The notes below the pieces were generated by a model that was given only the letters and a program-made list of their open reading frames with translations, made no database searches and was not told the DNA's origin. This document shows, piece after piece, positions 2,080-54,975 of a stretch of DNA of 64,000 nucleotides. Origin of the DNA: Penicillus capitatus (taxonomy: Eukaryota; Plantae; Chlorophyta); the NCBI GenBank assembly GCA_965649825.1, contig OZ287702.1:796786-860785 (forward strand), given 5' to 3'. Every line of letters starts with the position of its first letter. Position 1 is the stretch's first letter. A program made the position numbers and the translations under genes.

Positions 2080-5000
2080 ATGATAAACTTCAGACGGTCT
2101 GCAGTCGGTATCATTCTGCTTCTATATTGTCTGGCAGAAGCACAACAAGAGCTCGAAGGTGAAAGGAACAAACACACTCGTTCTTCGGAAACTTCTCGTA
2201 GACACGCAACATTACCTTTTGTCGCTCTTTCCGGCCCGGAAAGAGAGAGATTCGAGTTGCTAGAAACCGAACGTGTGCTTGGACACGCGTTTTAACCTTG
2301 AGGCTTTCTTCACAGGAGAGGGATGCGCTTTGAAAGAGGAAGGCACCAACGCAAGTTTTAATGAAGAACGTGGGACATGGACCGTCGGCGACGAGTTTTT
2401 TGAAGACTACGACTTGCAAGACGTTGTCGACTGTGCGAGTGAGGGAGATGTGATACGCTTGAACGTTGTTGTGTTAAGCCAACACGCCCCTAACAATGAG
2501 CTCATCTACTTACACTTGTGTCGATCTCCAAGCGACAGGTCGTAGGTTCGCTACACCTTCCCATCCACAAATAGACCCGCGGCTCTACGTCACAGATTCC
2601 AAGTAGATTCCGGAATCTTCGCAGAATATTCCTTCTTTGTTACTTAAAATAAAGTACCCTATAAAAGCTTTGTGAATGTACAGATCTTGTCTTTCGTTTG
2701 TAAGACTTTACGTTTCACAGGTCTACGTGCGCCCACCTTTAAAATTGTTTCCATCTAAAAACCTACGCAACAACGTCTCCAAAACCATTCGTCCACGAAG
2801 ACGCATTGAGATCGTGAAACGTCTCGAAATACGCGGAGTCTATGAAGAGAGTCCCGCAGGCGCAAACGTTCCGAAACCAGCGCTGACGTGCCCTTTGGGC
2901 AACTCGCTCCTCTTTATCCAGTCAGTTACAATAGACACCTCAGTGTAGTTCTGAATTGCGTCTGCAGGAATGCGAGTACCATTTTGCAGAACGTTGTCGT
3001 TCGAGATTGCGAGTTCGCGGAGCAGTTCGCGAATCTTAACATCGTCGATGTCACCTGCAATCAATCCCGCGAGGGTCCCATCGTACTCGAAATGATCGGC
3101 GTTGAATTCATCAACAATCGCAATCTACGTGGGAGAGTTGGATTTCATGTTCATAATGCTTCCTGCGTCTCGGTCACTCTTCGCAACTTCACATTCCGAC
3201 AAAATGAATATCTACTTGGTTCTGTTTTCGGAAAGCAGAATGACCTCGAGAGCGTACTCATTTCTGATAACATCCAGTGGCTCCAAATGACCATCAGAGG
3301 CGAATTCACCGCATTCTTCAATACAGAAATGCAGCGGAATGAATTTTTGGGCAGAGCAAACGATAACGATCAACCGTACAATCATTTTCGTTCCCTATGG
3401 ATTAGATTTAACAAGAGTTGTGGCTGCAGGTTTGAGGACATGGCACATCCAACAGACGTCTCTGCTTTAAAGAATGCCGTCTTTCGCTTTCCGGAGACGT
3501 CAACATCAAGACTGAAGGATATCGTTTCGATGAACAACACCGGCTGCGTGATGTCTATTGAGAGAGGAACGCTGACAGTGATTGGGATTCACAGTTTATT
3601 AACAACACTGGCGGGATCGGCTCCGTTATCATCGCCTTTCGAAGCAATGTCTCTCTGACCGATGCTGTATTCGAGATCAACGCGTACAATAACCCAGGAG
3701 GATGCTGGACTTGGCAGATGGAAGAGATAGCTTGATCCGCAACGTGCATTTTCGGAGGAATTTCGCCATAGCAGGCTCTTGTATTCTTGCGACGGATCCG
3801 AAGAGTCTGGGCATCTGGAACTCCACTCTGGAGCTGAACTACAATGACTATGGAGGGGCGGTTTCCGTAGACAGATCCTTCGATTCGAATTCGAGCTTGA
3901 CGATTTCCGATTGTCGGTTTTTGACAAACAATGTGACTGGGTCTGGACACCGTGCCAGGGGCAGCGTCGTCATCCAGCGTTTTAATGGCGGGAATATCAC
4001 AATACAATCGACGACCTTTGGACGACAGGTTGAAGAAAGGTGTTCGCTTCACTCTGACAATCTTTTCGGAATGTTCATTAATGATGATCGTATCGGAATG
4101 GTAGTGCTGACGGACACTCTGAACATTGCACTGGCTGTCAGAAATTGTTCGTTTGTCAAGGGACTCGGTATTTTGGGCAGCGGGATCCGTTTGGTAGACG
4201 TCAGTGGCAACTTCTCTATCGCACAATCTCTGTTTCATGAGATCAGAACTTGCACCTATGCGAGTGCCATATTCTTGAGATCTGCCAGTGCATACGGTAC
4301 TGTTCCCACGATGCTGACTATTACAGACTGTGCAGTTTCTTCAAATCGTTTCCGCGGCCAGACGATCTACATAAGTGGAAGCAGAGTAAACGCAGAACTG
4401 GGAGGAATACGATTTGAGGACAATGTTATCAATACCCGGTGGTGGATTGGAGGTTCCGTATTATTTGCAGGTGGCGTCGACAGTCTCTCTATGATAAACT
4501 GCACGTTGCAGAACAACAGCGCTCTGATTGATCGTAGTACTATGGAAGAGATGGGATCAGTGCACATAGAACGCACCCGAAGAATCAGGATAGAGCGAAG
4601 CAATTTCAACGCCAATTCGGTGGGTTCGAGAAGAGGGAATGCTGGAGGTGCCATCTATTGTTCCGCTGACGGAGAAACCAGCAGTCTAGAAATACATGAA
4701 TGCGAATTTGAGAGGAATGTTGCTGCTGACGGTGGAGCTCTTTATCTCAGCGGCTTCCACCATCTTCGTTTGACAAACTGTACCTTTCGAGAAAACAGAG
4801 CCGCTGATTATGGAGGAGCAATCCGTATTCTTGCACCAACCTCTGGGTATGACGACATCATTAGAGTAAACTTCACCGGAAACAAAGCTGCCGTCGGGGG
4901 GGCCTTGTGTATCAGCGGTCAACAGACACCATCACTGCAAGAGTCCTTTTTCTCAGAAAATGAAGCAACGTTGTATGGAGGTGCCATTGCACTGATAGCG

Positions 5001-7920
5001 CTCCATCGACCAGGATCCTTTGCATACAATGGATCCATCATCTACGACGGGACTGGCGCACGCTCCCAGACTCAACTACCATACATGACTCCATACGGCG
5101 AAACCATAGGTCGTTCCAGCACATTTATAGCAAATAGAGCATCGTTCGGAGGTAGCACCGACTAATATGTTTGCATAGTACTAAAAGTGAGGTCATTGTC
5201 TCCAGGAGCTCTTTTCTTCTATGGCGCTCGCGTCATTGTCGATGTGGACATCAACCCAACCCAAGTCTTTAATGCGTCCAGTCACTGTCTCTACTGTCGA
5301 TTTCGAGACAGACTAAACTGTACCAGGAATCATGCAAGCATTGCTGGAGGTGCCATTTTTGCAAGAGAGATACGAGACGCAAAGCACTTCATGGAACGCT
5401 GCAGAAATGTTGGAGAAGAACCACTCGAGGAGAACACTGTCACCACCTCGTACGCTGAGAATCCGGTGTGCCTGGTGGACGCAGACAACACTGTCGGAGA
5501 AGGCGGATATGGTCCAGATGTTGCCACCACAGCAATCGGCTTCTTCGCCGCACTGATCTACGACAACGGAACTCGGGTGATACTAGAAGAAGGAGCTGAG
5601 TATGACTTTGGCGATTGGAAGAGCGGTGACGATTTTCCCACGATGCAGATTTCCCTCCATGACGACTATGGACAAGGTCCGGCAAGAAAGGGATCTTCAT
5701 CCGTAAATTTGCCTCACGCCGACCTGGGAAATGTGCACCTGCCTGACTATTCGGCTCCTGTCACAGCAGTTTTGAGATCTGCTGATGGTCTTCTTCCGAA
5801 CGACATCGTGGCCGATTTAGCATCAGGAGAGGCAAATCTCACAATCGGTTCGCCGATGGTGAAACCTGAAATCTACACAGCTACCCTGAGTGTACCGGAC
5901 TTGTCCACAGAAAGTATACGTTTTAGAGTCAGAATCCGTCCGTGCATCGTAAACGAAGTGCCTCGTGAGGACAACAGGGGTTGTAATGAATGCGATCCTG
6001 GACAATACAACTTTGATCCCAGAAAAGGAAGATGTGTCACATGTCCAGACGATGCAGACTGTTTGGGCAAGTATATTCTCCCAGAGTCCGAACACTGGAA
6101 TGCATTTCCATGCTCGCACCACGTTCAAAAGTGCATTTCTACAGAAGCCTGTCTTGGCCGAAACTCAGAAGCTCTAAACACCACCTCATTGGAAGACAAG
6201 GCGACAGGATGCGAACTGTCCGAAAAAGATGTTAGAGATTATCAGTTGGCTTTGTGCAAAGAAGGATATGAAGGCTCCCTGTGCGGGTCGTGCGCAAGGG
6301 ATCATGGTAGGTTCGGCACATTTAGGTGCCTGCCATGTCAGCATCCTATCAGTGCGATTGCGACTGTTATTGCCGCCCTCTTCTTCATGACGATTCTTTC
6401 GCTGATTCAGATAAGAGGGACATTGACCCTTGCAGATCTACAGTCGTCGAGGAGAAACTTTTCGAGATTAATCAAACGCTGGAAAAGACTCTCTGTCCAC
6501 CACAATACGAATACCAATCAGAGAGTCACGGACACGCCTCAACAAGAAGCAGGACCCTCAGATCCAACTGCGCGACCTCGAGATTCGTCATCGGACTACC
6601 AAAGTAAAGCGCAAGAAGAGAACATAAAGTTCGTGCAAATCCTAAAGGTGACCTGTCATTTTCTTCAAGGATCTCTCTGCTGCATCAGTTATGTGCAGAT
6701 TGCCGTGAACTTTGTTCAAGTCGTGGCTGCTGGAATGGCACTGGACATAGCTTGGTCGTCGTCCGTACTCCGACTTTTCGAAGCTTGGGGTGCGTGACAT
6801 TTGCATCATTGATTTAATAAGAGTGACTCCTGCTTGCTACACAGATTGGATAGGCGGAGCCGTGAGCCTGTCCTTTGGATTTTCATTCGGCTGCTTATTG
6901 CCAAAAAATGCAGCAACGTCGACATCTGTTGTGCTGGCGATTATGACGCTCTCCATGCCTCCGTTCGTCGCCTCTTTCATTTGTTTAGTCTGGACAAGCT
7001 ATGCAGTGATGAAAGGCAGGCCAGGGGTATACCTGATCCGAAGAATCGTTCTTGTGTGTGTCTCTGTCTTCTACGTCTCCTATCTTCCTCTCGTCCGCAC
7101 GGCCATCAGCGTGTTTTCCTGCGTGGATGTCTTTTACGCTGTCACTCTTGAAGGAGTTGATGCATCGCATTCTTACTGGGCCGTGGACATGTCCATCAGG
7201 TGTTTCGTCAGCAGCCACAAGGTTCTTGCAATCGGCGTCGCCCTCCCGGTTCTCATGCTCTCTCTCCTCTTTCCTGTCCTCATGGCTACGATTCTCATCA
7301 TCGCCAGCAAGAAGGATTCACTTCGTTCTCCCTGGATTCGAGAAACATTCGGCATACATTTTGCCGCTTTAAAAGAACTCTTCATATTCTGGGAATGCAT
7401 TGTCTTGTTAAGGAAGTTTCTAATAGCTGTTGTAGCTGCCTTTTCGTACGATTTAGAAGCCAATCTACAGGGAATGTTTCTTCTTGCTATTCTACTGCTT
7501 GCACTTTTTCTGCACGTTTCGGCATCACCATTCAGGTCAAACATGAACACCCTCAATCTCCTTGAATCCGCGTCTCTCATTATTAGTGCGTCTACTATAC
7601 TGTGTGGTCTCATTCTGAATGACAAGAAGATTTCGCATGATATTTTGTCATCCAGTTTGACGGCAGCCATTCTGTTTCTGAATATCGGTTTCTCCTTGGT
7701 GCTTGCTTACTTTCTGGCAAAACACAAAATCAATGAAATGCATTTCGTTCTTTTGTCGAATGGAGAAGAACTGCCGTCGAACAATATATTCAGCGTGATT
7801 AAGAACTTTCTCGTCCATCGTTTCGAACAACTCAAAAATGCACTCACACAGAAACCCCGCGACATACAACATTCTGGTTTGGTACCGAGAGTCGAGTTGA
7901 CACCGGATCTTCCAAACTAG
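2080..7920 (+). pseudogene. Large cell-surface receptor/adhesin-like gene: signal peptide, pectin-lyase-like beta-helix with Pmp-like GGA(I/L/V) and FxxN repeats, Cys-rich GCC2/GCC3-like region, multi-TM C-terminus; probably disrupted
   Basis: N-terminus MINFRRSAVGIILLLYCLAEAQQ; repeats such as FERNVAADGGAL, FRENRAADYGGAI, FTGNKAAVGGAL; CNECDPGQYNFDPRKGRCVTCPDDADC and CKEGYEGSLCGSC; many hydrophobic helices in 6350-7720. Solo LTR at 2467-2772 and apparent 1-nt frameshifts near 3585 and 3705. Confidence 0.8.
2467..2772. mobile_element. Solo LTR (306 bp) inserted in a coding exon
   Basis: Termini TGTTG...CAACA; 4-bp target-site duplication ACGT at 2463-2466 and 2773-2776; internal AATAAA and TATAAAAG near 2648-2668. 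Removing the element and one TSD copy restores DVIRLNVSKTIRPRRRIEI. Confidence 0.85.
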
Positions 7921-14408: not shown

Positions 14409-16161
14409 CTAAACAAGACGAAGCATGTTCAAAACTGCATCCTCCACTCGGCGCCGCAGCAGTTCCGATTTGAGTTTCTGGTTGATTTCTGACCCGAAGG
14501 AATAGACCAATGCACGACGTGCCGATTCCAAGTCAATGCCTCGTGCCCTACAAATCAGCCGTCTCTGATCCTTTCCCAAAGGCCACGCAAGTGTTTCTAC
14601 CTGAAGTAGAATACCTCATCGTCTGAAAGATCGGACACGGTGCAGCCATGCGTGCACTTCACATCGTCCGCCACAATCTGAAGGTTGGGCTTCACGTTCA
14701 CCGTTGCCTTGGGTGCCAGAAGCAAATTGCGGCTCAACTGTCCCGCATCTGTTTTCTGTGCGCGACGATTCACCTAAGAGAGATTCTCGCTCACGGTCTG
14801 CCTGATCAAGAATTCTTCACCTGGACGTTGCCATCGAATACTCCGGAGCCTGAGGACGACGTGACAATACACTTGTGCAGCTGGTTGACGGTGCCCGAAG
14901 AGTGATCCAGAGTGACTTTTGAATGCAAGTCATGCAGCTGTGTATCGCCTGACAGATGAAAGTGATACATCTCAGTCTCTGTTTCATCTCCACTCTACAG
15001 CCTGTCACATCAAAGACGGAACCTTCATGGACCAGCCAACCTGTTCGATGTCAAGATCGTGTCTGGAGAGCTGTCCGCCGATGGTCGATTCCACTAGATG
15101 ATAATTCGATTTGGTCGATTGACGGACGAGGGTGGTTTTCATGTGATAGCCAGATGGACCATCGAGCTGCACGTAATGATGGAAGAGCTCTGCGTTTTCG
15201 TCAAGTTCGATCTCACAGACGGGAAGAGAGAGGTGTGCACCCGAAGTACCATCCAGCATCACGAACTCTTCTACGACCTCCAGACGACTGCCGTTCCGAC
15301 ACTTGATGAAAAGACGAGGAGCTGATACATGAAAATCTTCGCCATCCCCTAACGAGATCACAGACATCCAGCGTCTCTCAGCACAAGAGTGAGACCTGAC
15401 GAGAGATAGACAATGTGTAGAGGCTGTGCGATCTGGGTATCTCTGGGAATGTCGAGACAGAGGGCGTCCGTAAACAGTGCACCATTCAGCTTCGCAAATG
15501 GACCTCCTCTCGCCGACGACTGAGCACCCTGTAGAAAACCAGTCCTTCTTCTTTGTCAGTCGAGATCGATTTCGCCTGACCAGGAGGTCCAATGAAGTGG
15601 TCCTTTGGTTTGTGTCCTGGATGCATTTCTTCAAATCGTCGTCCAGTGTGGTGACCTTCCACTGAAGGACGCCGTTGAGAATGATAACTCGGTTTCTGCT
15701 GTCTTCCTCCAACAACAGTCCATCAATGGCACTGTCCTCCACAGCCACTGTTGTATTCGCTTTCTTGACGGGGGCTTTGAGAATTGGCGATATATCAGTG
15801 AAACGAAAGGTCTCTTCTTGAGTTGTTGGCATTCGAAGTGTGCTCAATTCCTGCAGGCTTTTTTCTCTGATATCGCCGAAGACATTACTACAGGACGCGT
15901 TTTTTCTCCCGTCGTCTAAGAATGCAACAGGGAGCACTCACCTTTCTGCAGAAAGGCAGTTTTTGAGGAGACGCGAAATGAAGCGATCTTCGACCTCTTC
16001 TGCACGTATTCCATTCCCGGTTGCCTTCCTTCGCACCGCTCGACGCCCATCGACCCCACCACGAATCTCCGCTACACCACAACCTCGATCATGTAGGAGC
16101 ACGCCAAACGCGTGTCTGAAGACTTACGACGTGCGATTCGGTTTGGAATGGAAGCCATCAT
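14409..16161 (-). CDS. SUFD: Plastid Fe-S cluster assembly protein SufD
   Basis: Transit-peptide-like start; LRMPTTQEETFRFTD, APRLFI, LEVVEEF, QIVADDVKCTHGCTVSDL, FYFRARGID. Confidence 0.92.
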
Positions 16162-43889: not shown

Positions 43890-46800
43890 TTATGCCTGAT
43901 GCATAGAAGCTCTCAGGGTGGAAGAAAAGTCATGAAAAGTTTTCTGCTGTTTGGGAGTCATCTTGGCAACAGCTGTCGTCAAAATCTCATTGCCCATGGA
44001 GTGACTAAACGACTGCAGAATGTTCCAAATGCGGGTAGCTGTCTCCGGCATCGTCATCGTCTTCCCTGCAGCCAAGATGCGCACCAGCACCTTCAAAACA
44101 CACACATCAACACACTCTCACTCTTTTGCTGATAATGAGTGACCTCCACAATGTGAACAAGATTCTTGTTGTTGCCACCGAGAACCCGGACATCCTGCTG
44201 TTCGACCATCGTTACCAGCAGTGCATGCATGTTTCTGGCCTCTAGGTCATCGTGGAGCAAAGGTAAGTTCTTGAGCCAGACTTGGTCCACCACTTCCGGA
44301 TCCACCTTGTCCGGAAACTGCTGGATGATCTTGCCAATCGTCGAGACGATGTTATCCGTGGCCATTTCGTTTTCGCGACTCTTGGCAGAAGGGTGCTGAA
44401 CAGCACGGATCAGATTTGGAAGCAGTTCAGGGATGTGTGGCTGAAAAGCTTCCGGATACTTCGACGCCACAACACCCAATCCATACACACTGCATTGCCG
44501 CAGACTCGCATCTTCATTCGATGCGCCTTCGATCAAGAAAGGCAAAAATTCGTGCAAGTAATTGTTTCCAGCCTGTGGGCAGTGCTCCAAAATATCGTCC
44601 ACGACACAAATGGCGATTCGGCGTTCCACAGCCGAGCGGCCTTTGCCCAAAAGTGCATGAACAAATGGCATTGAACCGACGATGTAGGTAATCACGGCAT
44701 CGCCGTACCTCTTCATGAAAGAGGAGAGAACGGTGGCCACTTCGTCCAGCACATCTGTCTCCATCTCTTCCTCATCATCATGATTCGTCGGGGGAACATT
44801 CTCATACTCCTCAAAATCGTCCTCTTCATCGGACAGGAGACCTTCAATGCGTTGCTTTCGACGATCTTCGCTCTCGGAGAAGACCATACGCAATGTGTCG
44901 AAACACTGGGAGACCATTGTTTCGGAGAGCAGTTCTGGTGTTAGGATGTCCACCATGGCAGCAATAGCACGCAATGCAGACTCTATCACTTCAAGTTCGT
45001 CTTCGTTTTTGAGGGCGTCGATGGCGGCTGGCCAGATGAATTCGACCATCTGTTTCACAAAATCCAGCGTGACACCAGCGCCGTTTTTCATTCCGGTCAG
45101 TGCGGCATCGAGAAGCTCTGGAAGACACTGAAATGCTCCGCTCCGAACTTCATCACTGAAAATGAATTTCAGCATAGGGACAACCACATCTGTGATCTCT
45201 TTGACGTACGGCAGGAAGCCATCTTTCAACACGCCGGCATAACTGGCAACCATTTCGCAGGCAGTGGCTTTCTCCTCCATGGCACTGCTGCGCAATCGCA
45301 CGAGCTTGCCACCCACATGGAAAGTCTCGGAGTCGTCGTCATCGCTGTTGTCATTTAGAGGATCTGTGATCTTGATCTCTGGATCGGCTTTGATGTGATT
45401 CAGCACAAGCGGCATGACGATTTCGAGGTAGGGGAGGAATTCACGTCCCAGACTGCGACACATTCTGGCTCCTGCCTGAATCATGTAACCAGGCAACGGA
45501 TCAGAAGGATCAAAGTGCGCCTGATGCAGTTGATGAATGAGTTGCATGACTTCACTGGCATCTTGACGGAAACGATCTGCGCCGACGGCCATCCCCACCA
45601 GCGAAATGCACTCCAATGCCTTCGCCCTCAAGTATCGATGTTTAGGATCGGTCGCCTGAGCAAACATGGTCCGAAGCAGCGGCATCACCGCATCGTAGTA
45701 GGCGCCAAAATGCTCATTTGCGCTGTCTGCCACACTGGCCAGTGCCGTGAGTGCAGATTCCGCCACCAGACGCGAGGGAGAGTGCAGGAGTTGTATGAAA
45801 GTGGGCACCAGAGCATCCAGATAGGGCAGAATGTCATCCTCCTCGCATTCATCGCAGAAATTGACAATCGCTGCTGCTGCATGTGCCTGAACGCGTGGAT
45901 GCTGAGCATCTTCCATCACCGATTTCAGTTTTGGGATGATCTTCTCGTGCTGCGAGCCTTGGATATCTGGAGAGAGATCGGTGCACATCTGCCCAATGGC
46001 TTGACAGGCAGCCCATCGCACTTTGGGCATCGTATCGCTCAATCCATTCATGCACATATCTGTCAGCGCATCGATTTCTTGCAGCATGACTTTGTCACAT
46101 CCTTCTGCAATTTGTGACAGACAGATGAAAGACGCCTGCCTTTTCTGCCAAGAGGGATCATTGATGCAGCCACTCAGCATGGCGCCAGCGATCGGAACTA
46201 ACACTCTGCCACCGAACGACAGAGCCAGACGATCCAAGGACTCCATACCAAAATCAAACAGCTCGCCATTTCCTGCGTCTTCATCCTCATCTTCTGCTGT
46301 ATGCCATTTGGGCAGGTCTTCGATGTCGAGCAAGAAAACCATCAACGCCTCGAAGAGACACTCTGCGAAATTTGGCATGGCTCTGAAGAGATTTCCCAGC
46401 CCCTGGTCTTTCTGCTCGGCAATCGAGATCAAGACTTCTGCTGCCAAGATACGCATCGATTTGTCGATGGAATCCGAGAGCGTCACTTTCAGCAGGGATG
46501 GTAATATTTCCTTTAGAGATGGCTTCAGAAAACGCGGTGCCTCTTCGGCGACATCGATGAGACTCTCCATCACCGTCTCAGCCGCCGTCTCGTCTCTATT
46601 CTTCAAAAACTCAAGCAGCGCTTCGATCACTTTGGGCACCATGGGTCTCAGAGCATCCGCCACCTGACCTTTCTCGGATGCAATTCTGCACATCGCTGAG
46701 ATGGCTTCGGATTTGACAGGGACAGGTCCTGTGAGAATTGCCCGTTCGATAGCCGTCACTAACATCTGACCAGTGGCGTTGAAAATCTCAAAGTCTGTGT

Positions 46801-47311
46801 TCTCTGCCAGAGAACCAATGATGCGAAAAGCAGTGACCACTGCATGCGATTCAGAACCCTCCATCAACTGAAACAGGGCCTGATGCAATTCTGGCCATCG
46901 GCCTGTCGACAACAAGTAACGGGCGAGTTCGGAAACAGCATCGGCCGTTTTGAACAGCACATCTGCGATTTTTTCAGCACGGAGCGCATTTAAGAGCTCA
47001 CTCTTCACTTCATACTTCACCGGATCTGACAGAGCCGTCCACATCAACGGAGTCTCGATCGTCAAGCATTTGCGAAGGAGCATTGCCGAGAAGGCACGAA
47101 ATGCCACGACCTCTGAGTGACGCACCGTAGATATGAGATAACGCACAAACAAGTCTGGATGTTTCTTCAACTCGACTAACACCGCCTCGGCAAATTTCCG
47201 TCGAGTGTTGTCCGGGTTCATGAGCTCCCGTAAGAAATCTTCAAACTGCTGGGCATCGGGCGTCATCAACACCTGGACGATTTGTTGCACTTTGGCCGCC
47301 GACATCGCCAT
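43890..47311 (-). CDS. IPO5: Importin-5 / karyopherin beta-3 (HEAT repeats)
   Basis: ESLDRLALSFGG, WQKRQASFICLSQIAEGC, PRVQAHAAAAIVNF, LRAKALECISLVGMAVG, MEEKATAC, ATDNIVSTIGKI. Confidence 0.95.
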
Positions 47312-47406
47312 TCTCTTCGACGGTCTCAGAGCAGACGTACGTCGAAAATGCAACGGAGAGGGATAGATGATGAGGTCATCATGCATTTACTGGCGATAAC
47401 CGAGTG

Positions 47407-49759
47407 ATGAATGCGCCTTTGTTGAAGGGATGTGGATGGACAAGTCGTTGGGCGATGTTAAGCGCATGGAGGGCGTTGCCTCCGTCACCGACTCGACACT
47501 TAAAGGCCTCGCGTCTCTATGCGAAGAAAGGGATGTCGCGTCGAGTGAAGACGACGAGGACAGAGGCGCCGTCTGAGATCAGGGAGATATCGGGCAGCCT
47601 GGAGGAGCCACCTATCGTGATAGATGAGGTGACAGCCTCAGAGGAAGAGGAGGTTGAGACGCTCTCTGTGGCTCCCCCGGTCGAGGCAGAGGAGGAAGAA
47701 AACGAGATCGGCGTGGTGAACAGTGTGGCGCCTGTTGTCGAGGAGTCATCATTTGACGAGACGCCGCCCGTTGATGAGCACGTCGAGAGTGTCTTTCACG
47801 AAACGGTGGACCCAATGCCGCTGCATACTCGAATTTTGTCGTCAATGGACTGGGGAGCAGCTGGGATGGGGACAGGCATCGCTGCCGCTATTCTTGGAGC
47901 GTTGTTCGTGGGGCGAAGCTTCGCTCAGGGGGATTCGAGTCGCAACACACTTGCCACGACGATTCACAAAGTGATCTTTTCGTGGACGTCGGTTGTTACA
48001 TCTCCCGTATTCTGTTTAGGGAACGAAATACTACAAGCTACAGAAAGAGGCAGAAGTTCGATTGAATAGCTTCATGGCCATCATTCAACATCAACAAAAG
48101 GCCAATCTCTCCGCCAAGGTCGCCAAGAGATACGAGTATCTCACTCTTATGTGTGAGATTGAGACAGAATCTCGGAGATGAGGGATGCTGTTACGTCATC
48201 GAGTCATTGGCTTTCAACAACATCTGTGAGATGTTGGACCTGAGCAACAATGGTATTGGAGAGAAAGGCATCATACACATGAGTGAGATGTTGACAAAAA
48301 ACAACGTGCTCAAGGCACTTTTGCTCTCAACGAATAATGCAGGAGATGAAGGAGCAAAGGCTTTGGCCAAAGTTCTTGCCAGTAGAGCCAGTCACTGTTT
48401 TGAAGGATGTCGGTATGGTGGTGGTGATGCTAGGTAACACATCTATGGAGACGTTGTGTCTGAATGGGAACAATGTTGGTAATGAGGGGGCGATTCTGTT
48501 GGCTGAGATGCTGAAAACGAATACCACTCTCAAAACCCTCGAACTGAACAGCAATTCTATCGAGTATGAAGGAGCGGCGGCTTTGGCTGAGGCCCTTGCT
48601 CAGAACAGTACTTTAAAAAACCTCGCCATCAGGTACCTCGCTGCATAAAGTGTGCTCAGTATCATTCTCTGTTGCAGTGATAACTATATTGGAGGTATGG
48701 GTGCCTCGCTCTTTGCCCAGGCACTGAAGAAAAACACATCGATTGAGGAGTTCTCCATCAAGGGGAACGAAATCGGAAACGAAGGGTTGAAAGCACTTAG
48801 CGAAGCCCTGATTGTAAGCGTCTCTCCTTCTTTATCTCCATTCTTCTCCTCGTATGCAAGGAAAGGGAATCTGATATACGCTCCCTGGATATTGGAAACA
48901 ATGGCATCACTGAAGAAGGAGCAGAGATGTTGGCAATGCTCATCCGTGCCAAGAATCTGGAAAACCTGGAGATCTACAGCAATGATCTGGCAGACGGAGG
49001 TCTGTATAAGGTAACATCAACTGTCGTGTAAAACAGAACTGTATGACAGAGGATGTCATCTATGTAGATCGCTCAATCTCTGATGGGCAATGAGACACTG
49101 TTCTCTTTGGATCTGGGAGGCAACAACATTGGCCCCGATGGTATCAAAGTGCTTTCTGCTGCCATCCGTGACAGCCCCTCTCTGCGTTCACTCGATCTCA
49201 GCTATAATCCCATTGGATCAGACGGTGCCGAGGCCATCGCAGATGTCACCAAATACGATCTCAAAGTGCCTATCCTTCCTCCTTCGCATCCCTTACTCAT
49301 AGGCGAATGGTGTGGACAGCTGGACACTTTGAAGTTAGGTTGGTGCAAACTGGAACAGCAAGGAGCACAGGGCATTGCAGATTTGATCATGTACAACACA
49401 TCCTTAGCCATTATCGATCTACGAGGCAACAATCTCGGAGACTACGGTGCCATCATCATTGCCAACAGCTTAAAACAGCACGAGAATATGAATCTGATCG
49501 AGCTCGATATGGGATACAACGAAATCAAAGATGACGGCGCCTGTGCTCTGGCACAGGTTCTATACGCACCCACCATCTGCGCCCTTTGGATAGGACTGCT
49601 GTGTTCTAGAGTCTCAAGGCCAATGCTGAGGGGGCAGTCAAAGAACTGAAGCTCAATTCGAATTACATTAGCAGATTCGGTCAGATCGCTCTGAACGAAG
49701 CACTGGACGTGGTGTTTGAAATAAGTGGGGGTAACAAAGAGACCACCATCATATTTTAA
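47407..49759 (+). CDS. Plastid-targeted RNI-like leucine-rich-repeat protein (similar to plant At1g10510-type proteins)
   Basis: Transit peptide, acidic linker and one TM helix, then LRRs (LDLSNNGIGEKG, LCLNGNNVGNEG, LDLGGNNIGPDG, LKLGWCKL, IDLRGNNLGDYG); spliced C-terminus ...LNSNYISRFGQIALNEALD...TIIF*. Confidence 0.85.
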
Positions 49760-49839
49760 TGACACACACATACACACAACACCGTGACACAGATGATGTA
49801 TCAAGAGATAATCTGATCTTTCGCTCGCAGATGCACGGT

Positions 49840-50539
49840 CTACGGCACACGCATCTTTGAAAAGAGACGTTGGACAGAAGAGAGCGAGATGATGCATCGT
49901 TCGAAATTGAGTGTCCCCTGGAAACGTCACATCCCAAAGAATGTGTGCGATGGCCTGCCTTGCCTTGGAGATGATGACGAGTTCGAGAAATGCCAGAGCA
50001 CCACCGGCAGCAATGTCTGAGAAGTAATGCCTTCCGAGTAAGACCCGGGAGAGCGCTGTTACCAACGACCACCAAAACACGAGACACTGCATCCACCAAC
50101 TTCCCAGATGCCACATCATCCAGAACAGTCCCACAAAGAGGCACCTCGATGCATGTCCACTCGGAAACGAATACCGATCGACGTCCACCACCAGGAGATA
50201 GTCTCCAGCGTCATTGTACGATGGCCGAGGACGTCGAACGATGCATTTTAGAAGACCCACAAATGCGAGATCGATGAGGAGACCCAGGAAGAGATTGAGT
50301 GCAAATGTTCGGATCGTCGTGGTGAAGTAATGATGTGGGAAGCAGCCAACGAAGAGTGCAAGGGGAAACATAATGGGACCGCCGATATGCTCCAGAACGA
50401 GGAAGACTCTGCGTGGGACTTTCTTGCCTAGACTTCGGTAGAGAGTATAGGATATATGTGCGTCGACAGATTGCAACGTGGAGAACGAGCAGCGCGAGCA
50501 ACGACAGTTGTGCAGCTCATTTGTCGGCAGGAGTGACAT
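49840..50539 (-). CDS. PAP2-superfamily lipid phosphate phosphatase (PLPP6/7-like)
   Basis: LKCIVRRPRP (C1), YSFPSGHASR (C2), SRVLLGRHYFSD (C3); the 3' end uses a GC-AG intron at 49918-49963 and ends ...FSKMRVP*. Confidence 0.88.
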
Positions 50540-50578
50540 ATCCAAGTGCTCGCGGGACTTAGAGATGTGACGGATGGC

Positions 50579-51751
50579 ATGGCAACCAGGCTTACACGCA
50601 GCGCTTTGAAGATTCGACGGTTCTTGGCAACGCGTGTGGCGGCTAGGGAGGAACGTGGCTGGGCTTCTTACTTACTGTTCTTGCCCGCAGCCTTTGCCTC
50701 TGGTCTTGGCATCTGGCAGATCCAGAGAAGGTCCTGGAAAGTGAAGGATCGCCTCTGTTGCGCTGTCTTTGCTTGACAAAGGGACGTTGAACTGTTAGGA
50801 AGATCTTCTCCGACTGAGAGAATCAAAAGTCTTTTCAGAGCCCTTCTCACTCTTTCCTCGCTTCACAGACATCACTCCATATGATCGAGTCACTGTCCAC
50901 GGAATCTTCCTGCACGATAAATCGGTCTTTATCGGTCCCCGTGTCCGAACGTAGAGCCCACGCGTTTTGATGGTTTTGTCGATGGGCATGTTTTTTTTTT
51001 GTATGCAGTATTGATGGTATGCCGCAAAAGGGATATGTCCTCATCACGCCGTTACTCGATCCAGAGAGGTTCCAGCCTGAATCCCTGACGCACTGCGGCA
51101 ATGATGTGGTCGTTCTTAGTCACCATGTGGCCTTGGTGAATCGGGGCTGGGTTCCTGAATCTTGGAAAGAGATGTCGAGAAATGGCTCAGAGGGACAGCA
51201 ACGACAGCAGACAGGAAACGCTGCGAAGATCGATGGGTTGGTGGTCGAGAGCGAAAAGCCAAGCATGTTTGTACCGGAGAACGATCCGGTCAAAGGAACC
51301 TGGTTTTGGATCGATGCCATCGAAATCGTACGCGATGGACTTCCCTCAGGAAAGAGGGCACACCGAATGGCATTCTATTGTTTAGGCCAAGACATGTGGT
51401 CTGCCAGCAGAGACACCATTGATTCAAGTCATTCAGCAGACGGCTCAAGGCAAACTCCCTCCAGCGATCCGTACGACCTGCCTTGGCCTCCTCAACCTGT
51501 CACATCATTCTGCTGATAGATGGCGGTCGTGGAAGGACGATCGAGTTCAATTCCAGAGAGAGCTACCCTGTTGCCAAAGAGCTGTCCGATTTTGTCAACT
51601 TCTCCGTCATGCCAGGTGATGCTCCTTGTGTCGAGGGATGACGATTTCATCACACTGTTGTGCAGTGGATCACCGTAACTACGCATGGATCTGGTTCTCC
51701 CTGTCGCTGGTCACATCTTTCATGGCGTATCGAGTGACGAGGGGGAAGTGA
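50579..51751 (+). CDS. SURF1: SURF1/Shy1 cytochrome c oxidase assembly protein
   Basis: LGIWQIQRRSWK, QKGYVLITPL, LVNRGWVP, FVPENDPVKGTWFWID, DHRNYAWIWFSLS. Confidence 0.93.
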
Positions 51752-52113: not shown

Positions 52114-54169
52114 TTAACGTGTTTTGCTGTCTGCCCCCGACAACTCCGACAGGAGTTTTCGGAACCTCTGCTGTTGGCGAAAGCTCTCCCTCATGATCAA
52201 ATCCACTTCGCGCTTGGAGAGTTCCTGATAGCTCTTGGACTGCGAAACACGATCGAAATCGTTCACAATGTGATTCAAAACGGCAGACTGTAGCGCATCC
52301 AGTCCATTTGCATCTGCCAATGACAACAGCGCCGCCGAAAAATCTGCAGCCCCTTCGGGATCTTCATCATAACGCGTCTTGAGCTGCTCGACCAACAGAG
52401 ACTCGCATGTTTTGATCAAGCGAGGAACACCATAGTAACAAGCCGCATGCAAGATATCGATCACCAGCTGTGAATCCAAATCCCCTGGGAGTTCATCTTT
52501 GTAAATATATTGGAGGAAATGGGACATGGCTTCTTGGGAGAACTGACTGGGAACACAGAGCTCGTCATCTTCAGAATCGCACATGTCGCTTTCGAATCTT
52601 GCACGGAAATACTCACAGCGCACTGTCAGAGACACCATCGCATAGAGAGACATGACGACATTCACACCCATCTTACCTTTCAGTACGGTTCTGTGAGAAC
52701 TAAGGGTCCAATCTTCACCCACCAGTGCGCAGTCTGGTTCTGCAAAGTGTACTAAATCCAAACAGACGTCTTCTGCAGAGTTCTGTGATTTGGTTGCATC
52801 TTTCCCGTGGCGGAATCCGAGAAGATTGCTGATGGATCTTTTGACTCTTCTGGGTCCTTTGATGGATGATGAGGATTCGTTCTCGACATCCATTTCGCCA
52901 TCTGACGCAATGCCTTCCGAGAAAGAGCGCACGAGTTTTGTATCTTCTGTCAATGTGGAGGGTGGCACGTCTACCATCATCTTCTCCTCCCGTTCCGCGT
53001 TCATGATAGAGAGAACGATGTCGGCATCGGATGGAACGGAGAGATCCGAGAATCGAACTTGTGTGAGGATGCGTTGCTGGATACGCCCATCTGCCTTGCG
53101 CGTGATCAGTCGAAGTTCTTGGCCCACCGGGACAGTCATTTTACCGCCGTCCAGTTTCAGCATGCGCACGAGATTTGGTAACTTGTCTTCCGGACATGTG
53201 CCACCGACATGGATCTTATCAAAGTAATCGCGATGGACCGTCGGAATAAACGCATTGCGTAAAAGAAACTGCACTGGGCAGCTATCGCGTACGTAAGCAC
53301 GGTTATCTTCGCGAAGCTTCTGAAGACAGGCGGTGGAAAAATCCAGAATCTCTTGTTTGATCTCGACACCCACACATTCCCCATTTCTGCCAACCTACAC
53401 ACGCCAACATTCGAGCAGACTGCACAAACGCACACCTACCAAATAAGCGCCACAGGCAGCGACAATTCCACAACCACTTCCGATATCCATAAACCTGTCA
53501 GTCACATCATCCATCACACCCCACATGCCGTGATGCCGAGTGACAGGCAATAGGGTATCACTTTTCGCCTGGCTGTAGGTCTAGGGCTTCGAGACAGGTG
53601 GCGTGCATGTGCGGCGCCGAAATGTTGAATTCCATCTCCTCGACCCGTATCGGTGTGTCCGAATAGGCCTCTTCCTTGTAATCCGTCGGAATGAATGTCC
53701 CGCGTGGGCACATGAGCAATGCCTTTTCGACGCGTTGACTACCGTCGCAGCGTCGACATCATACCAATGCCTTTTTGAACACGGCCTACCTCTTAACCAC
53801 GTTGAGCTCTTTGAGAATATTGACCAATTCGGTATTGTCCGCAGCGGTTTCTTGCATATTGACACGTGGTCCGGCAAAAAGGCGGAAGAAATCTCGTAGG
53901 ACCAAGTTTCGGTTCATTCTTTCGTTTCCTCCAGGCGGTCCTTGCATCGCACGTCGACGTTCGTTTCGTCCCGTGAGCTCGGGATGCTCGTCGTTCGGTT
54001 CTTCGTCTTCTTCACCGTCGTCCTCTGCCTCGTCGTCGTCGTCCACCTCGTCGTTGTCGTCGAAAAGCTCTTCGTCGCTGTCGTTGGTGTCTACGCTCTG
54101 TTCGAAGATATCGTCGTTGTCTTCACCGTCATCGAGATGCACAAAAACGTGCTCTCTGTTTGCAGACAT
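52114..54169 (-). CDS. Fusion protein: acidic N-terminus + protein-L-isoaspartate O-methyltransferase (PIMT/PCMT) domain + BTB/POZ (+ BACK-like helices)
   Basis: Spliced translation gives FNISAPHMHATCLEAL, motif I FMDIGSGCG, motif II FDKIHVGG, motif III LKLDGGKMTVPVG and VRFSDL. It continues in the same ORF into HRTVLK-VRCEYFRARFES...MSHFLQYIYKDEL...ACYYGVPRLIKTCE (BTB). Confidence 0.9.
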
Positions 54170-54349: not shown

Positions 54350-54975
54350 TCAACGGTGGTGAGGAACGGGGGCTGCTCTGTAGAGATGGATGCACCGGAG
54401 ACGGAGGGACCTGTACGTCGCGGAATATTTGAAAAAGACTGTAGGTGAGTGTGGGTACTTGAAAAGAGTAAAAATGTGAACTGTCAGTACCGGGAATGAT
54501 GTACGGATTCGGAGATGGAGCGAAGCCGAGACAGGAGACGGTGGAATTGGTTGAGGTGACTGGTCTTCATCCTTATCGTGTCTGCACGCGTGCCAAAGGG
54601 TGTGCTCCATAGGATTTGGTGATTGAGTATGTATCCGCTCTGCTTGAGAGAGCTGTAGATATGGCGAGCTTTCGAGGAAAGCTCAAGTATGAAGATTTCG
54701 TCTGGCAAGTCTCGGAAGTGCAATCGGACATCGTTCTGTAACGCAACAGAGTGTCCTTTTCGTTTCTAGGAGCCCTACAAGCTCGAACGACTGAAAGAGC
54801 TTCTCGAAAAGAACGAGGAGATTAAGAAAGCCCGGAAGGTGAAGACATCGGAGAGTGTCGGACGATGTGCGCGGGAGACGGTGTTGTGTGCAGGTGGATC
54901 TTGATAAGAATGATCTTGCGGCCCTTGGTTCGCGAGACAAAGACGTCAAGGATGCAGGAGAGAACGGCCATCCAT
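54350..54975 (-). CDS. Hypothetical multi-exon protein (boundaries uncertain)
   Basis: A 43-nt GT-AG intron joins LLVLFEKLFQSFEL to NDVRLHFRDLPDEIFILELSSKARHIYSSLKQSGYILNHQILW; no start codon resolved. Confidence 0.35.

What the first reader, a model, noticed from the sequence alone, without database searches (positions are those of the whole stretch)
52114..54169. PIMT-BTB fusion: candidate CUL3 adaptor linking isoaspartate damage recognition to ubiquitination
Seen: one spliced gene encodes a D/E-rich N-terminus, a PIMT domain with the canonical ISAPHMHA signature and AdoMet motifs I-III, and a C-terminal BTB/POZ domain with BACK-like helices. The PIMT-to-BTB junction lies inside one uninterrupted ORF (52114-53373), so it is not a gene-merging artefact. 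Established: PIMT binds and methylates L-isoAsp residues; BTB domains recruit Cullin-3; animal PCMTD1 pairs a PIMT-like domain with a SOCS box to recruit Cullin-5/Elongin BC. Inference: this may be an independently evolved, CUL3-based repair-or-destroy module. Unlike PCMTD1 it keeps the PCMT1-type substrate motif, so it may both methylate and ubiquitinate damaged proteins. I know of no functional description of this architecture, but could not search for one.
Basis: partly seen in the sequence, partly recalled or inferred. Interest (0 to 1): 0.85.

Follow-up and report, generated by a model that had tools for sequence, protein, structure and literature searches.

The report
Isoaspartate-reader domain fused to a BTB adaptor
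A green-alga gene joins a variant of the enzyme domain that recognises age-damaged (isoaspartyl) proteins to a BTB domain of the kind that recruits the Cullin-3 ubiquitin ligase; the fusion is real, old and widespread among protists, but nobody has tested what it does.

Summary
On the minus strand, 54169-52114, a five-exon gene encodes 612 aa: an acidic tail, a PIMT-like domain (Pfam PCMT, E 3e-38), a disordered linker, and BTB plus 3-box/BACK helices (BTB E 1.6e-14; Foldseek match to SPOP BTB-BACK). A relative 91% identical in DNA supports the exon model: 103 of 130 exon substitutions fall at third codon positions.

Two corrections:
The PIMT-BTB junction still lies within one exon.
- The PCMT1-type motif is not fully kept. 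PCMT1 Thr57, whose change to His abolishes most PCMT1 methyltransferase activity, is Asn here and in 79 of 81 BTB-fused relatives. Motif II is RNA instead of GDG.

The architecture is not peculiar to this genome. At least 60 clusters at 50% identity carry it, in green algae, red algae, Amoebozoa and Heterolobosea. Sister architectures join the same domain class to RING fingers, and PCMTD-like relatives carry SOCS boxes.

Best reading: a CUL3 substrate receptor that reads isoaspartyl damage, analogous to animal PCMTD1-CRL5. Whether it also methylates is open. I found no paper on this architecture. Verdict: new variant of a known kind, moderately high interest.

The parts
52114..54169 (-). Whole coding region of the PIMT-like/BTB gene (612 aa, 5 exons, stop TAA at 52116-52114)
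   Evidence: splice model. (Pfam). (the orthologue in L001/L002 splices to an intact 609-610 aa protein under the same model).
53790..54169 (-). Exon 1: acidic N-terminus, conserved helix, start of the PIMT fold
   Evidence: The junction sequence NVVK|SQRVEK matches homologues.
53739..53789 (-). Intron 1 (51 nt, GT..AG)
53562..53738 (-). Exon 2: pre-motif I region
53495..53561 (-). Intron 2 (67 nt); 22-24% substitutions and an 8-nt indel against the relative
53440..53494 (-). Exon 3: motif I
53395..53439 (-). Intron 3 (45 nt)
52677..53394 (-). Exon 4: second half of the PIMT fold, linker and first strands of the BTB; holds the domain junction
52623..52676 (-).
   Evidence: BTB rises from 40.3 to 54.4 bits on removal. 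(7-nt deletion in the relative). (absent from all homologues).
52114..52622 (-). Exon 5: rest of the BTB, 3-box/BACK-like helices, stop
53954..54169 (-). Acidic, disordered N-terminus (residues 1-72, 34 D/E)
   Evidence: pLDDT below 50.
53876..53914 (-). Conserved segment NRNLVLRDFFRLF (residues 86-98), function unknown
   Evidence: LxxFLRLIAG conserved in chlorophyte members. (helix, low confidence).
52972..53848 (-). PIMT-like seven-beta-strand methyltransferase fold (residues 108-345; spans introns 1-3)
   Evidence: PF01135. (PDB PIMTs and PCMTD1). (pLDDT above 90). (TM 0.85-0.88 to PIMT structures).
53600..53629 (-). Pre-motif I FNISAPHMHA; Asn165 (53626-53624) stands where PCMT1 has Thr57 and PCMTD1 has His
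53467..53490 (-). AdoMet motif I MDIGSGCG (family-specific Cys194)
53248..53268 (-). Motif II FLLRNAF (Asn251 where PCMT1 has Asp141)
52765..52902 (-). Disordered linker (residues 369-414)
   Evidence: pLDDT below 50. (variable length; absent in amoebozoan short forms).
52384..52734 (-). BTB/POZ core (residues 425-523; spans intron 4)
52576..52584 (-). M457-C458-D459 in the alpha3-beta4 loop, aligned with the phi-x-E CUL3 clamp motif (KLHL22 L-K-E)
   Evidence: alignment. (phi-x-[DE] in 81 of 85 family members). PMC3597819 for the role of the loop.
52120..52383 (-). Helical extension after the BTB (residues 524-611): 3-box/BACK-like
   Evidence: pLDDT above 90. (174 columns, rmsd 2.2 to SPOP BTB-BACK 4j8z; also KBTBD2-CUL3, A55-CUL3). 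(Pfam BACK only E 0.009).

Best explanation
The gene encodes a single-chain substrate receptor of a Cullin-3 RING ligase whose substrate-binding module is a PIMT-like domain.

Inferred mechanism:
- The BTB with its 3-box/BACK helices dimerises and docks onto the N-terminal domain of CUL3.
- The PIMT-like domain binds AdoMet and, through the retained SAPHMHA pocket, L-isoaspartyl residues in aged proteins.
- The bound protein is ubiquitinated and degraded.

This would be the CUL3 counterpart of animal PCMTD1-CRL5.

Shown here: the gene structure, the two folds, their conservation, the distribution of the family, and the class-specific residues.

Inferred only: AdoMet binding, isoAsp binding, CUL3 binding and ubiquitination.

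Open: whether the domain still transfers methyl groups. The almost invariant Asn at the PCMT1 Thr57 position and the Asn in motif II argue that it is not an ordinary repair enzyme.
For: Gene model and selection:
- Four GT..AG introns.
- Exon substitutions against a relative 91% identical in DNA fall 15/12/103 by codon position.
- Exon indels are 3 or 6 nt; intron indels are 7 and 8 nt.
- The orthologue is intact. Protein identity is 98.5% in the PIMT domain and 99.0% in BTB-BACK, against about 90% in the tail and linker.

Folds:
- Pfam PCMT E 3e-38 and BTB E 1.6e-14.
- AF2 mean pLDDT 81, with both domains above 90.
- Foldseek finds PIMT structures at TM 0.85-0.88. The C-terminus matches SPOP BTB-BACK and the CUL3-bound KBTBD2, A55 and KLHL3.

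CUL3 features:
- M457-x-D459 aligns with the phi-x-E loop of KLHL22.
- Phi-x-[DE] is kept in 81 of 85 family members.
- That loop clamps CUL3 helix H2, and the 3-box is needed for affinity (PMC3597819).

Architecture logic:
- About 60 of the 123 nearest cluster representatives aligned carry PIMT+BTB.
- The same N-class domain is fused to RING fingers in Euglenozoa. PCMTD-like neighbours carry SOCS boxes.
- So PIMT-like domains have been joined to three different E3 modules.

Precedent: PCMTD1 binds isoAsp peptides in an AdoMet-dependent way within CRL5 and does not methylate them (PMC12590147).

Single-transcript evidence: transcriptome ORFs of Tetraselmis, Bangiopsis and Nematostelium contain both domains.
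Against: - No biochemical datum exists for any member.
- The acidic residue of the loop motif is Asp, not Glu, here and in 64 of 85 members.
- Pfam BACK is below threshold.
- BTB domains also serve purely as oligomerisation modules.
- Even for PCMTD1, ubiquitination of isoAsp substrates has not been demonstrated (PMC12590147, Discussion).
- The pocket differs from both PCMT1 and PCMTD1 (Asn165, Cys194, Asn251), so the ligand could differ.
- I could not model the complex with CUL3. I also could not check that these species have CUL3; its presence in green algae rests on general knowledge.
Confidence: 0.55

Rival explanations
1. It is an active isoaspartyl repair methyltransferase. The BTB only makes it a dimer or tethers it to some partner other than CUL3, and no ubiquitination is involved.
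For: - SAPHMHA, motif I, the post-I acid (E215) and motif III are retained.
- The domain is on average nearer to canonical PIMTs than to the PCMTD class (distance 1.48 against 1.67).
- Many BTB proteins do not bind CUL3 (general knowledge).
Against: - Thr57 is replaced by Asn in 79 of 81 BTB-fused members. In PCMT1 a change at this site (T to H) removes most activity (PMC12590147).
- Motif II Asp is replaced by Asn, as in inactive PCMTD1.
- The phi-x-[DE] loop and 3-box/BACK helices are conserved.
- Sister architectures with RING and SOCS box point to ubiquitin ligation.
Confidence: 0.17
2. It is a dual repair-or-destroy enzyme. The domain both methylates isoAsp and presents the substrate to CUL3.
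For: - The pocket is closer to PCMT1 than PCMTD1's is (HMHA kept).
- Asn is smaller than the His that blocks the AdoMet-substrate channel in PCMTD1 (PMC12590147).
Against: - Same residue changes as above.
- In PCMTD1, restoring Thr did not restore activity, so several changes matter (PMC12590147).
- Nothing in the sequence can settle this.
Confidence: 0.2
3. It is a CUL3 receptor, but the PIMT-like pocket reads something other than L-isoaspartate, such as another carboxyl-bearing or damaged residue, or a specific native protein.
For: Class-specific, almost invariant changes in the pocket and cofactor site: Asn165, Cys194, Asn251.
Against: - PCMTD1, whose pre-motif I is more diverged (IHLSAPCIYS), still binds isoAsp specifically (PMC12590147).
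- Ser167-Ala-Pro-His-Met are invariant in the 32-sequence family alignment.
Confidence: 0.07
4. It is an annotation or assembly artefact: two neighbouring genes read as one.
For: Prokaryote-style gene calling on the relative's contig splits the locus into pieces.
Against: - The junction lies inside one exon.
- The frame is conserved with third-position substitutions throughout.
- The same architecture occurs in dozens of genomes and transcriptomes.
- The split falls exactly at intron 4, which breaks the frame in that species.
Confidence: 0.01

Closest known systems
PCMTD1/PCMTD2 (animal PIMT-domain proteins, substrate receptors of CRL5 through a SOCS box)
   Same: A PIMT-like domain is joined in one chain to a cullin-recruiting module. 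Motif II has Asn in place of Asp. The Thr57 position is replaced. There is a disordered, acidic low-complexity region. PCMTD1 gave E 3e-22 over the whole domain.
   Different: - BTB/3-box (CUL3) instead of SOCS box/Elongin BC (CUL5).
- Asn, not His, at the Thr57 position.
- HMHA and LDxGSG are kept.
- It falls outside the PCMTD clan in the tree (82% bootstrap for that clan).
- Found in algae and protists, not animals.
Canonical protein-L-isoaspartate O-methyltransferase (PCMT1/PIMT, EC 2.1.1.77)
   Same: Same fold (TM 0.85-0.88). SAPHMHA, motif I and motif III are shared.
   Different: - Thr57 is Asn; motif II GDG is RNA; extra helices follow strand 7.
- Multidomain, 612 aa against about 210-230 aa.
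- It lies outside the canonical clan (93% bootstrap).
SPOP and BTB-BACK-Kelch proteins (KLHL3, KLHL11, KLHL22, KBTBD2): single-chain CUL3 substrate adaptors
   Same: BTB core plus helical 3-box/BACK extension. A hydrophobic residue sits in the alpha3-beta4 loop (M457 aligns with KLHL22 Leu). The substrate-binding domain is in the same chain.
   Different: - The substrate domain is N-terminal, as in SPOP, and is a methyltransferase fold rather than MATH or Kelch.
- The loop has Asp where these proteins have Glu.
- BACK is short and below the Pfam threshold.
Cereblon (CRL4 receptor that reads C-terminal cyclic imides)
   Same: The concept only: a cullin-RING receptor that reads a spontaneous chemical damage mark (cited in PMC12590147).
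   Different: Unrelated fold and a different cullin. It is of interest because euglenozoan relatives combine RING, a PIMT-like domain and a Yippee domain. The Yippee fold is related to cereblon's CULT domain; that relation is my own knowledge and was not tested here.

Membership tests
Canonical PIMT / PCMT1 (EC 2.1.1.77) | Match to Pfam PF01135 above the gathering score, and the PIMT fold | tested here: met
   132 bits against a cut-off of 20.3. Foldseek TM 0.85-0.88 to 4o29, 2yxe and 1kr5.
Canonical PIMT / PCMT1 (EC 2.1.1.77) | Pre-motif I x-T-I-S-A-P-H-M, with Thr57 lining the AdoMet-substrate channel | tested here: not met
   The sequence is FNISAPHMHA. Asn165 aligns with Thr57. All 23 members of the canonical clan have Thr; 79 of 81 BTB-fused proteins have Asn.
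Canonical PIMT / PCMT1 (EC 2.1.1.77) | AdoMet motif I (D/ExGxGxG) and an acidic residue after strand 2 | tested here: met
   D189-I-G-S-G-C-G and E215.
Canonical PIMT / PCMT1 (EC 2.1.1.77) | Motif II V-G-D-G | tested here: not met
   The sequence is LLRNA. Asn251 sits in the Asp141 column. That column is Asn in 95 of 101 N-class sequences, and Asp in 17 of 26 T-class sequences.
Canonical PIMT / PCMT1 (EC 2.1.1.77) | Groups with canonical PIMTs in a tree of the domain | tested here: not met
   The canonical clan has 93% bootstrap and excludes the window protein. This is a neighbour-joining tree on 236 columns, so it is a rough test.
Canonical PIMT / PCMT1 (EC 2.1.1.77) | Methyl esterification of L-isoaspartyl peptides | not testable with these tools
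   Needs an enzyme assay.
PCMTD (PCMTD1/2, CRL5 receptors) | SOCS box (BC box and Cul5 box) after the PIMT-like domain | tested here: not met
   There is no SOCS_box hit; the C-terminus is a BTB. SOCS boxes are found in 6 of 31 non-BTB neighbours.
PCMTD (PCMTD1/2, CRL5 receptors) | His at the PCMT1 Thr57 position, with LNxGSGTG and YDRIYxGA motifs | tested here: not met
   The window protein has Asn165, MDIGSGCG and FDKIHVGG. The H clan has 82% bootstrap and excludes it.
PCMTD (PCMTD1/2, CRL5 receptors) | AdoMet-dependent binding of isoAsp without methyl transfer | not testable with these tools
   Needs native mass spectrometry and methylation assays, as in PMC12590147.
BTB/3-box CUL3 substrate adaptors | BTB/POZ fold | tested here: met
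   PF00651 at 54.4 bits against a cut-off of 20.5. PDB hits KLHL22, BTBD6 and SPOP. pLDDT above 89.
BTB/3-box CUL3 substrate adaptors | Phi-x-E motif in the alpha3-beta4 loop that clamps CUL3 helix H2 | tested here: inconclusive
   The window protein has M457-C-D459. The hydrophobic residue is kept, but the acid is Asp. The family has [MLWF]-x-[DE] in 81 of 85 members, with Asp in 64 and Glu in 17.
BTB/3-box CUL3 substrate adaptors | 3-box/BACK helices following the BTB | tested here: met
   The Foldseek alignment covers 174 columns of SPOP BTB-BACK at rmsd 2.2, and 160-165 columns of KBTBD2 and A55 BTB-BACK bound to CUL3. Pfam BACK is only E 0.009, so this is met by structure prediction, not by sequence profile.
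BTB/3-box CUL3 substrate adaptors | Direct binding to the CUL3 N-terminal domain, and homodimerisation | not testable with these tools
   No multimer prediction is available here. It needs a pull-down or ITC.

The most novel reading that the evidence does not exclude
N-class PIMT-like domains are a third, ancient branch of the PIMT superfamily that works as an isoaspartate reader wired to ubiquitin ligases. In green and red algae, Amoebozoa and Heterolobosea the module is a BTB (CUL3). In Euglenozoa it is a RING finger, there together with a Yippee domain. On this reading, degradation directed by isoAsp is an ancestral eukaryotic proteostasis pathway that arose apart from animal PCMTD-CRL5. 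The Asn variant of the pocket might still allow methyl transfer, which would give a true repair-or-destroy enzyme.
Probability: 0.35. Interest if true: 0.8.

Novelty: new variant of a known kind. Interest (0 to 1): 0.6.

Why it matters
Whether isoaspartyl damage acts as a degron is an open question. Even for human PCMTD1-CRL5, ubiquitination has not been shown (PMC12590147).

PIMT-like domains have been joined repeatedly to three different ubiquitin-ligase modules: SOCS box, BTB and RING. These fusions occur across distant eukaryotes and are under strong purifying selection. That is independent comparative support for the idea.

It also offers simpler experimental systems. The BTB form is a single-chain CUL3 receptor that needs no Elongin B/C, and it occurs in culturable algae and dictyostelids.

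The natural Thr/His/Asn series at one pocket residue gives a direct handle on what separates repair (methyl transfer) from recognition.

Tried and rejected
- Rfam and tRNA scans of the window found nothing.
- Six literature searches combining PCMTD1, isoaspartyl, PCMT, BTB, POZ and cullin returned only incidental co-mentions. None described a PIMT-BTB protein.
- Warmack et al. 2022 (PMC9875861) is not held. What I say about PCMTD1 therefore rests on Pang et al. 2025.
- That paper does not number the Thr/His residue in its main text. I identified it as Thr57 because it is the only T-to-H difference in my alignment.
- I used the last homologue search on a canonical PIMT (Closterium). The aim was to see whether algae that carry the fusion also keep a canonical enzyme. 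The 120 listed hits were nearly all land plants, so co-occurrence remains untested.
I used my own HMMs for BTB and PIMT and Pfam on subsets.
- The tree cannot say whether the N class is sister to the PCMTD class or to canonical PIMTs. The three groups meet at one node, the root is unknown, and the split for the N side has only 44% bootstrap because of divergent RING-type sequences.
- Shared features with PCMTD1 (Asn in motif II, a longer spacer before motif II) are suggestive only.
- Gene-merging artefact: rejected (see rival explanations).
Full report
**Observation and gene model**

The gene lies on the minus strand. I read the sequence and built a five-exon model:

| Feature | Window coordinates | Length |
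|---|---|---|
| Exon 1 | 54169-53790 | |
| Intron 1 | 53789-53739 | 51 nt |
| Exon 2 | 53738-53562 | |
| Intron 2 | 53561-53495 | 67 nt |
| Exon 3 | 53494-53440 | |
| Intron 3 | 53439-53395 | 45 nt |
| Exon 4 | 53394-52677 | |
| Intron 4 | 52676-52623 | 54 nt |
| Exon 5 | 52622-52114 | |

All four introns are GT..AG. The product is 612 aa.

Pfam gives PCMT (PF01135, E 3.1e-38, residues 112-320) and BTB (PF00651, E 1.6e-14, residues 425-523). BACK is only sub-threshold (E 0.009).

One correction concerns the ORF 52114-53373. It contains intron 4, which is 54 nt long, in frame and free of stops.
- Leaving it in lowers the BTB score from 54.4 to 40.3 bits.
- No homologue has the 18 extra residues.

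The domain junction itself lies wholly in exon 4.

**Independent support from a close relative**

A protein fragment 97% identical (P0045) led to two contigs of an ENA assembly, of 4.08 Mb and 0.6 Mb. They have the same neighbours as the window: SURF1, PAP2, an importin and an ankyrin gene. The locus is 91% identical in DNA.

Aligned to my model:
- Exon substitutions fall 15/12/103 on codon positions 1/2/3.
- Exon indels are 3 and 6 nt.
- Introns 2 and 4 carry 8-nt and 7-nt indels. The 7-nt deletion in intron 4 would break the frame, so that stretch is an intron.

The relative's gene splices to an intact protein of 609-610 aa. Protein identity by region:

| Region | Identity |
|---|---|
| PIMT domain | 98.5% |
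| BTB-BACK region | 99.0% |
| Acidic tail | about 90% |
| Linker | about 90% |

This is a functional gene under purifying selection on both domains.

**Structure**

The AlphaFold2 model was built with a 32-sequence family alignment. Mean pLDDT is 81.
- Residues 108-365 (PIMT fold plus two extra helices) and 420-611 (BTB and a helical extension) are mostly above 90.
- Residues 1-85 and 370-413 are disordered.

Foldseek against the PDB:
- PIMT structures at TM 0.85-0.88, and PCMTD1 (9oma).
- For the C-terminus, SPOP BTB-BACK (174 columns, rmsd 2.2), and the CUL3-bound KBTBD2, vaccinia A55 and KLHL3.

**The family**

The architecture is common. The first homologue search gave 44 hits, nearly all PCMT+BTB. 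An exhaustive HMMER search with the PIMT domain alone gave 70 cluster representatives at E below 1e-30. About 60 of the 123 representatives I aligned carry both domains.

Named members:

| Group | Members |
|---|---|
| Chlorophyta | Caulerpa lentillifera (two paralogues, 64% and 56%), Bryopsis (56%), Ostreobium (52%), Tetraselmis, Monoraphidium, Chlorella, Micractinium, Coccomyxa, Elliptochloris, Apatococcus |
| Rhodophyta | Porphyridium, Bangiopsis, Erythrolobus |
| Amoebozoa | Cavenderia fasciculata, Arcella, Nematostelium |
| Heterolobosea | Pharyngomonas |

The nearest named relatives are all Bryopsidales, so the window most likely comes from a siphonous ulvophyte. Several members are transcriptome ORFs, so the fusion is transcribed as one mRNA. 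Public names are automatic, for example "protein-L-isoaspartate O-methyltransferase" and "BTB domain-containing protein".

**The PIMT-like domain is its own class**

I aligned 161 domains. The residue at the PCMT1 Thr57 position sorts them into three classes.

| Class | Number | Pre-motif I | Motif I | Motif II | Motif III |
|---|---|---|---|---|---|
| T (canonical enzymes) | 26 | xTISAPHMHA | not tabulated | VGDG | DAIHVGAA |
| H (PCMTD-like) | 33 | xHxSAP | LNxGSGTG | GN | YDRIYxGA |
| N | 101 | FNISAPHM[HY]A | LDxGSGCG | xxNxF | DR[IV]HVGA |

- 79 of 81 BTB-fused proteins are N-class.
- In a neighbour-joining tree, the canonical clan has 93% bootstrap and the H clan 82%.
- The N side is not resolved as a single split (44%).
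- Mean distances are N-T 1.48, N-H 1.67 and H-T 1.73.

In my alignment, Thr57 is the only Thr-to-His difference between PCMT1 and PCMTD1, and it aligns with Asn165 of the window protein. Pang et al. 2025 (PMC12590147) report:
- This His blocks the channel between AdoMet and the substrate carboxylate.
- T-to-H in PCMT1 removes most activity.
- H-to-T does not restore activity in PCMTD1.
- PCMTD1 binds isoAsp peptides only with AdoMet bound, and does not methylate them.

The SAPHMHA pocket is kept, but the decisive position and motif II are changed in a family-wide, conserved way. Asn occupies the Asp141 column in 95 of 101 N-class sequences. Catalysis is an open question.

**The BTB looks like a CUL3 adaptor**

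M457-C458-D459 aligns with L-K-E of KLHL22. By my reading of the SPOP sequence, it also aligns with M233-E-E235 of SPOP. This loop clamps helix H2 of CUL3, and the following 3-box is required for affinity (Canning et al. 2013, PMC3597819).

Across 85 family BTBs the motif is [MLWF]-x-[DE] in 81. The acid is Asp in 64 and Glu in 17, the latter including the short forms of Arcella (P0041), Nematostelium (P0036) and the unnamed P0040. The helical extension matches BTB-BACK structures.

**Architecture logic**

The 31 nearest long relatives without a BTB have a PCMTD-like consensus. Among them:
- 9 carry RING fingers.
- 6 carry a SOCS box.
- 6 carry a Yippee/Mis18 domain.
- 2 carry a protein kinase.

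Per-protein scans show:
- RING + split N-class PIMT + Yippee in Euglenozoa: Urceolus and Papus here, and Lacrimia P0042.
- PIMT-kinase-RING.
- Two PIMT domains followed by a RING.

So PIMT-like domains have been wired to three kinds of E3 module. This is the strongest indirect argument that the BTB here serves ubiquitin ligation.

**Conclusion**

The most likely function is a CRL3 substrate receptor for isoaspartyl-damaged proteins (confidence about 0.55). It may or may not retain methyltransferase activity.

Rivals:
- A BTB-dimerised repair enzyme with no link to CUL3.
- A true dual-function enzyme.
- A CUL3 receptor with a different ligand.
- An annotation artefact, which is essentially excluded.

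I found no paper describing this architecture. The concept is known from PCMTD1. The module, the domain class and the taxa are different, so this is a new variant of a known kind.

Noticed in passing
P0120, P0121, P0124, P0137, P0042 (database proteins; Urceolus, Papus, Lacrimia): Euglenozoan proteins combine an N-terminal RING finger, a PIMT-like domain split by an insert (N-class in all but P0042, which has Thr at the Thr57 position), and a C-terminal Yippee/Mis18 domain. The Yippee fold is related to cereblon's CULT domain, a reader of cyclic-imide damage. That relation is my own knowledge and was not tested.
   Followed up: partly
P0092, P0127, P0087, P0122 (database proteins): Further PIMT-like architectures: PIMT-protein kinase-RING, two PIMT domains followed by a RING, and EF-hands followed by PIMT.
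   Followed up: no
window 52623-52676: This 54-nt intron is in frame and has no stop, so it hides inside a 419-codon ORF. In the close relative it is 47 nt.
   Followed up: yes
window 53864-53914: The segment NRNLVLRDFFRLFAGPR lies upstream of the PIMT fold. It is conserved in chlorophyte members (LxxFLRLIAG) and absent from amoebozoan short forms. The model gives a helix at low confidence. Its function is unknown.
   Followed up: no
window 53467-53490: Motif I has a family-specific Cys (GSGCG, at least 90% conserved), where PCMT1 has Ser and PCMTD1 has Thr.
   Followed up: no
window 54497-54760 (+): A TAF13-like gene (MMYGFGD... then DLVIEYVSALLERAV...) diverges from the PIMT-BTB gene. They share an upstream region of about 330 bp. 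I read this by eye and did not search it.
   Followed up: no
window 51019-51750 (+); 49442-50545 (-); 44093-47386 (-): SURF1-like, PAP2 phosphatase and importin-5-like genes lie in the same order as on the relative's 4-Mb contig.
   Followed up: partly
window 2888-7920 (+): Four long ORFs (256, 487, 536 and 376 codons) lie nearly end to end. The one at 3702-5165 carries Chlam_PMP repeats (PF02415, E 3.7e-9). The first 2 kb of the window has a higher GC content (0.57).
   Followed up: no
L001 and L002 (ENA ERZ26696514, contigs of 4.08 Mb and 0.6 Mb): Two nearly identical copies of the whole locus lie on different contigs of one assembly. They are probably haplotypes of a species close to the source of the window.
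   Followed up: partly
P0004 and P0005 (Caulerpa lentillifera): This species has two paralogues of the PIMT-BTB gene, 64% and 56% identical to the window protein.
   Followed up: no
window 15005-15937 (-): A SufB/D-type Fe-S assembly ORF, in keeping with a plastid-bearing organism.
   Followed up: no
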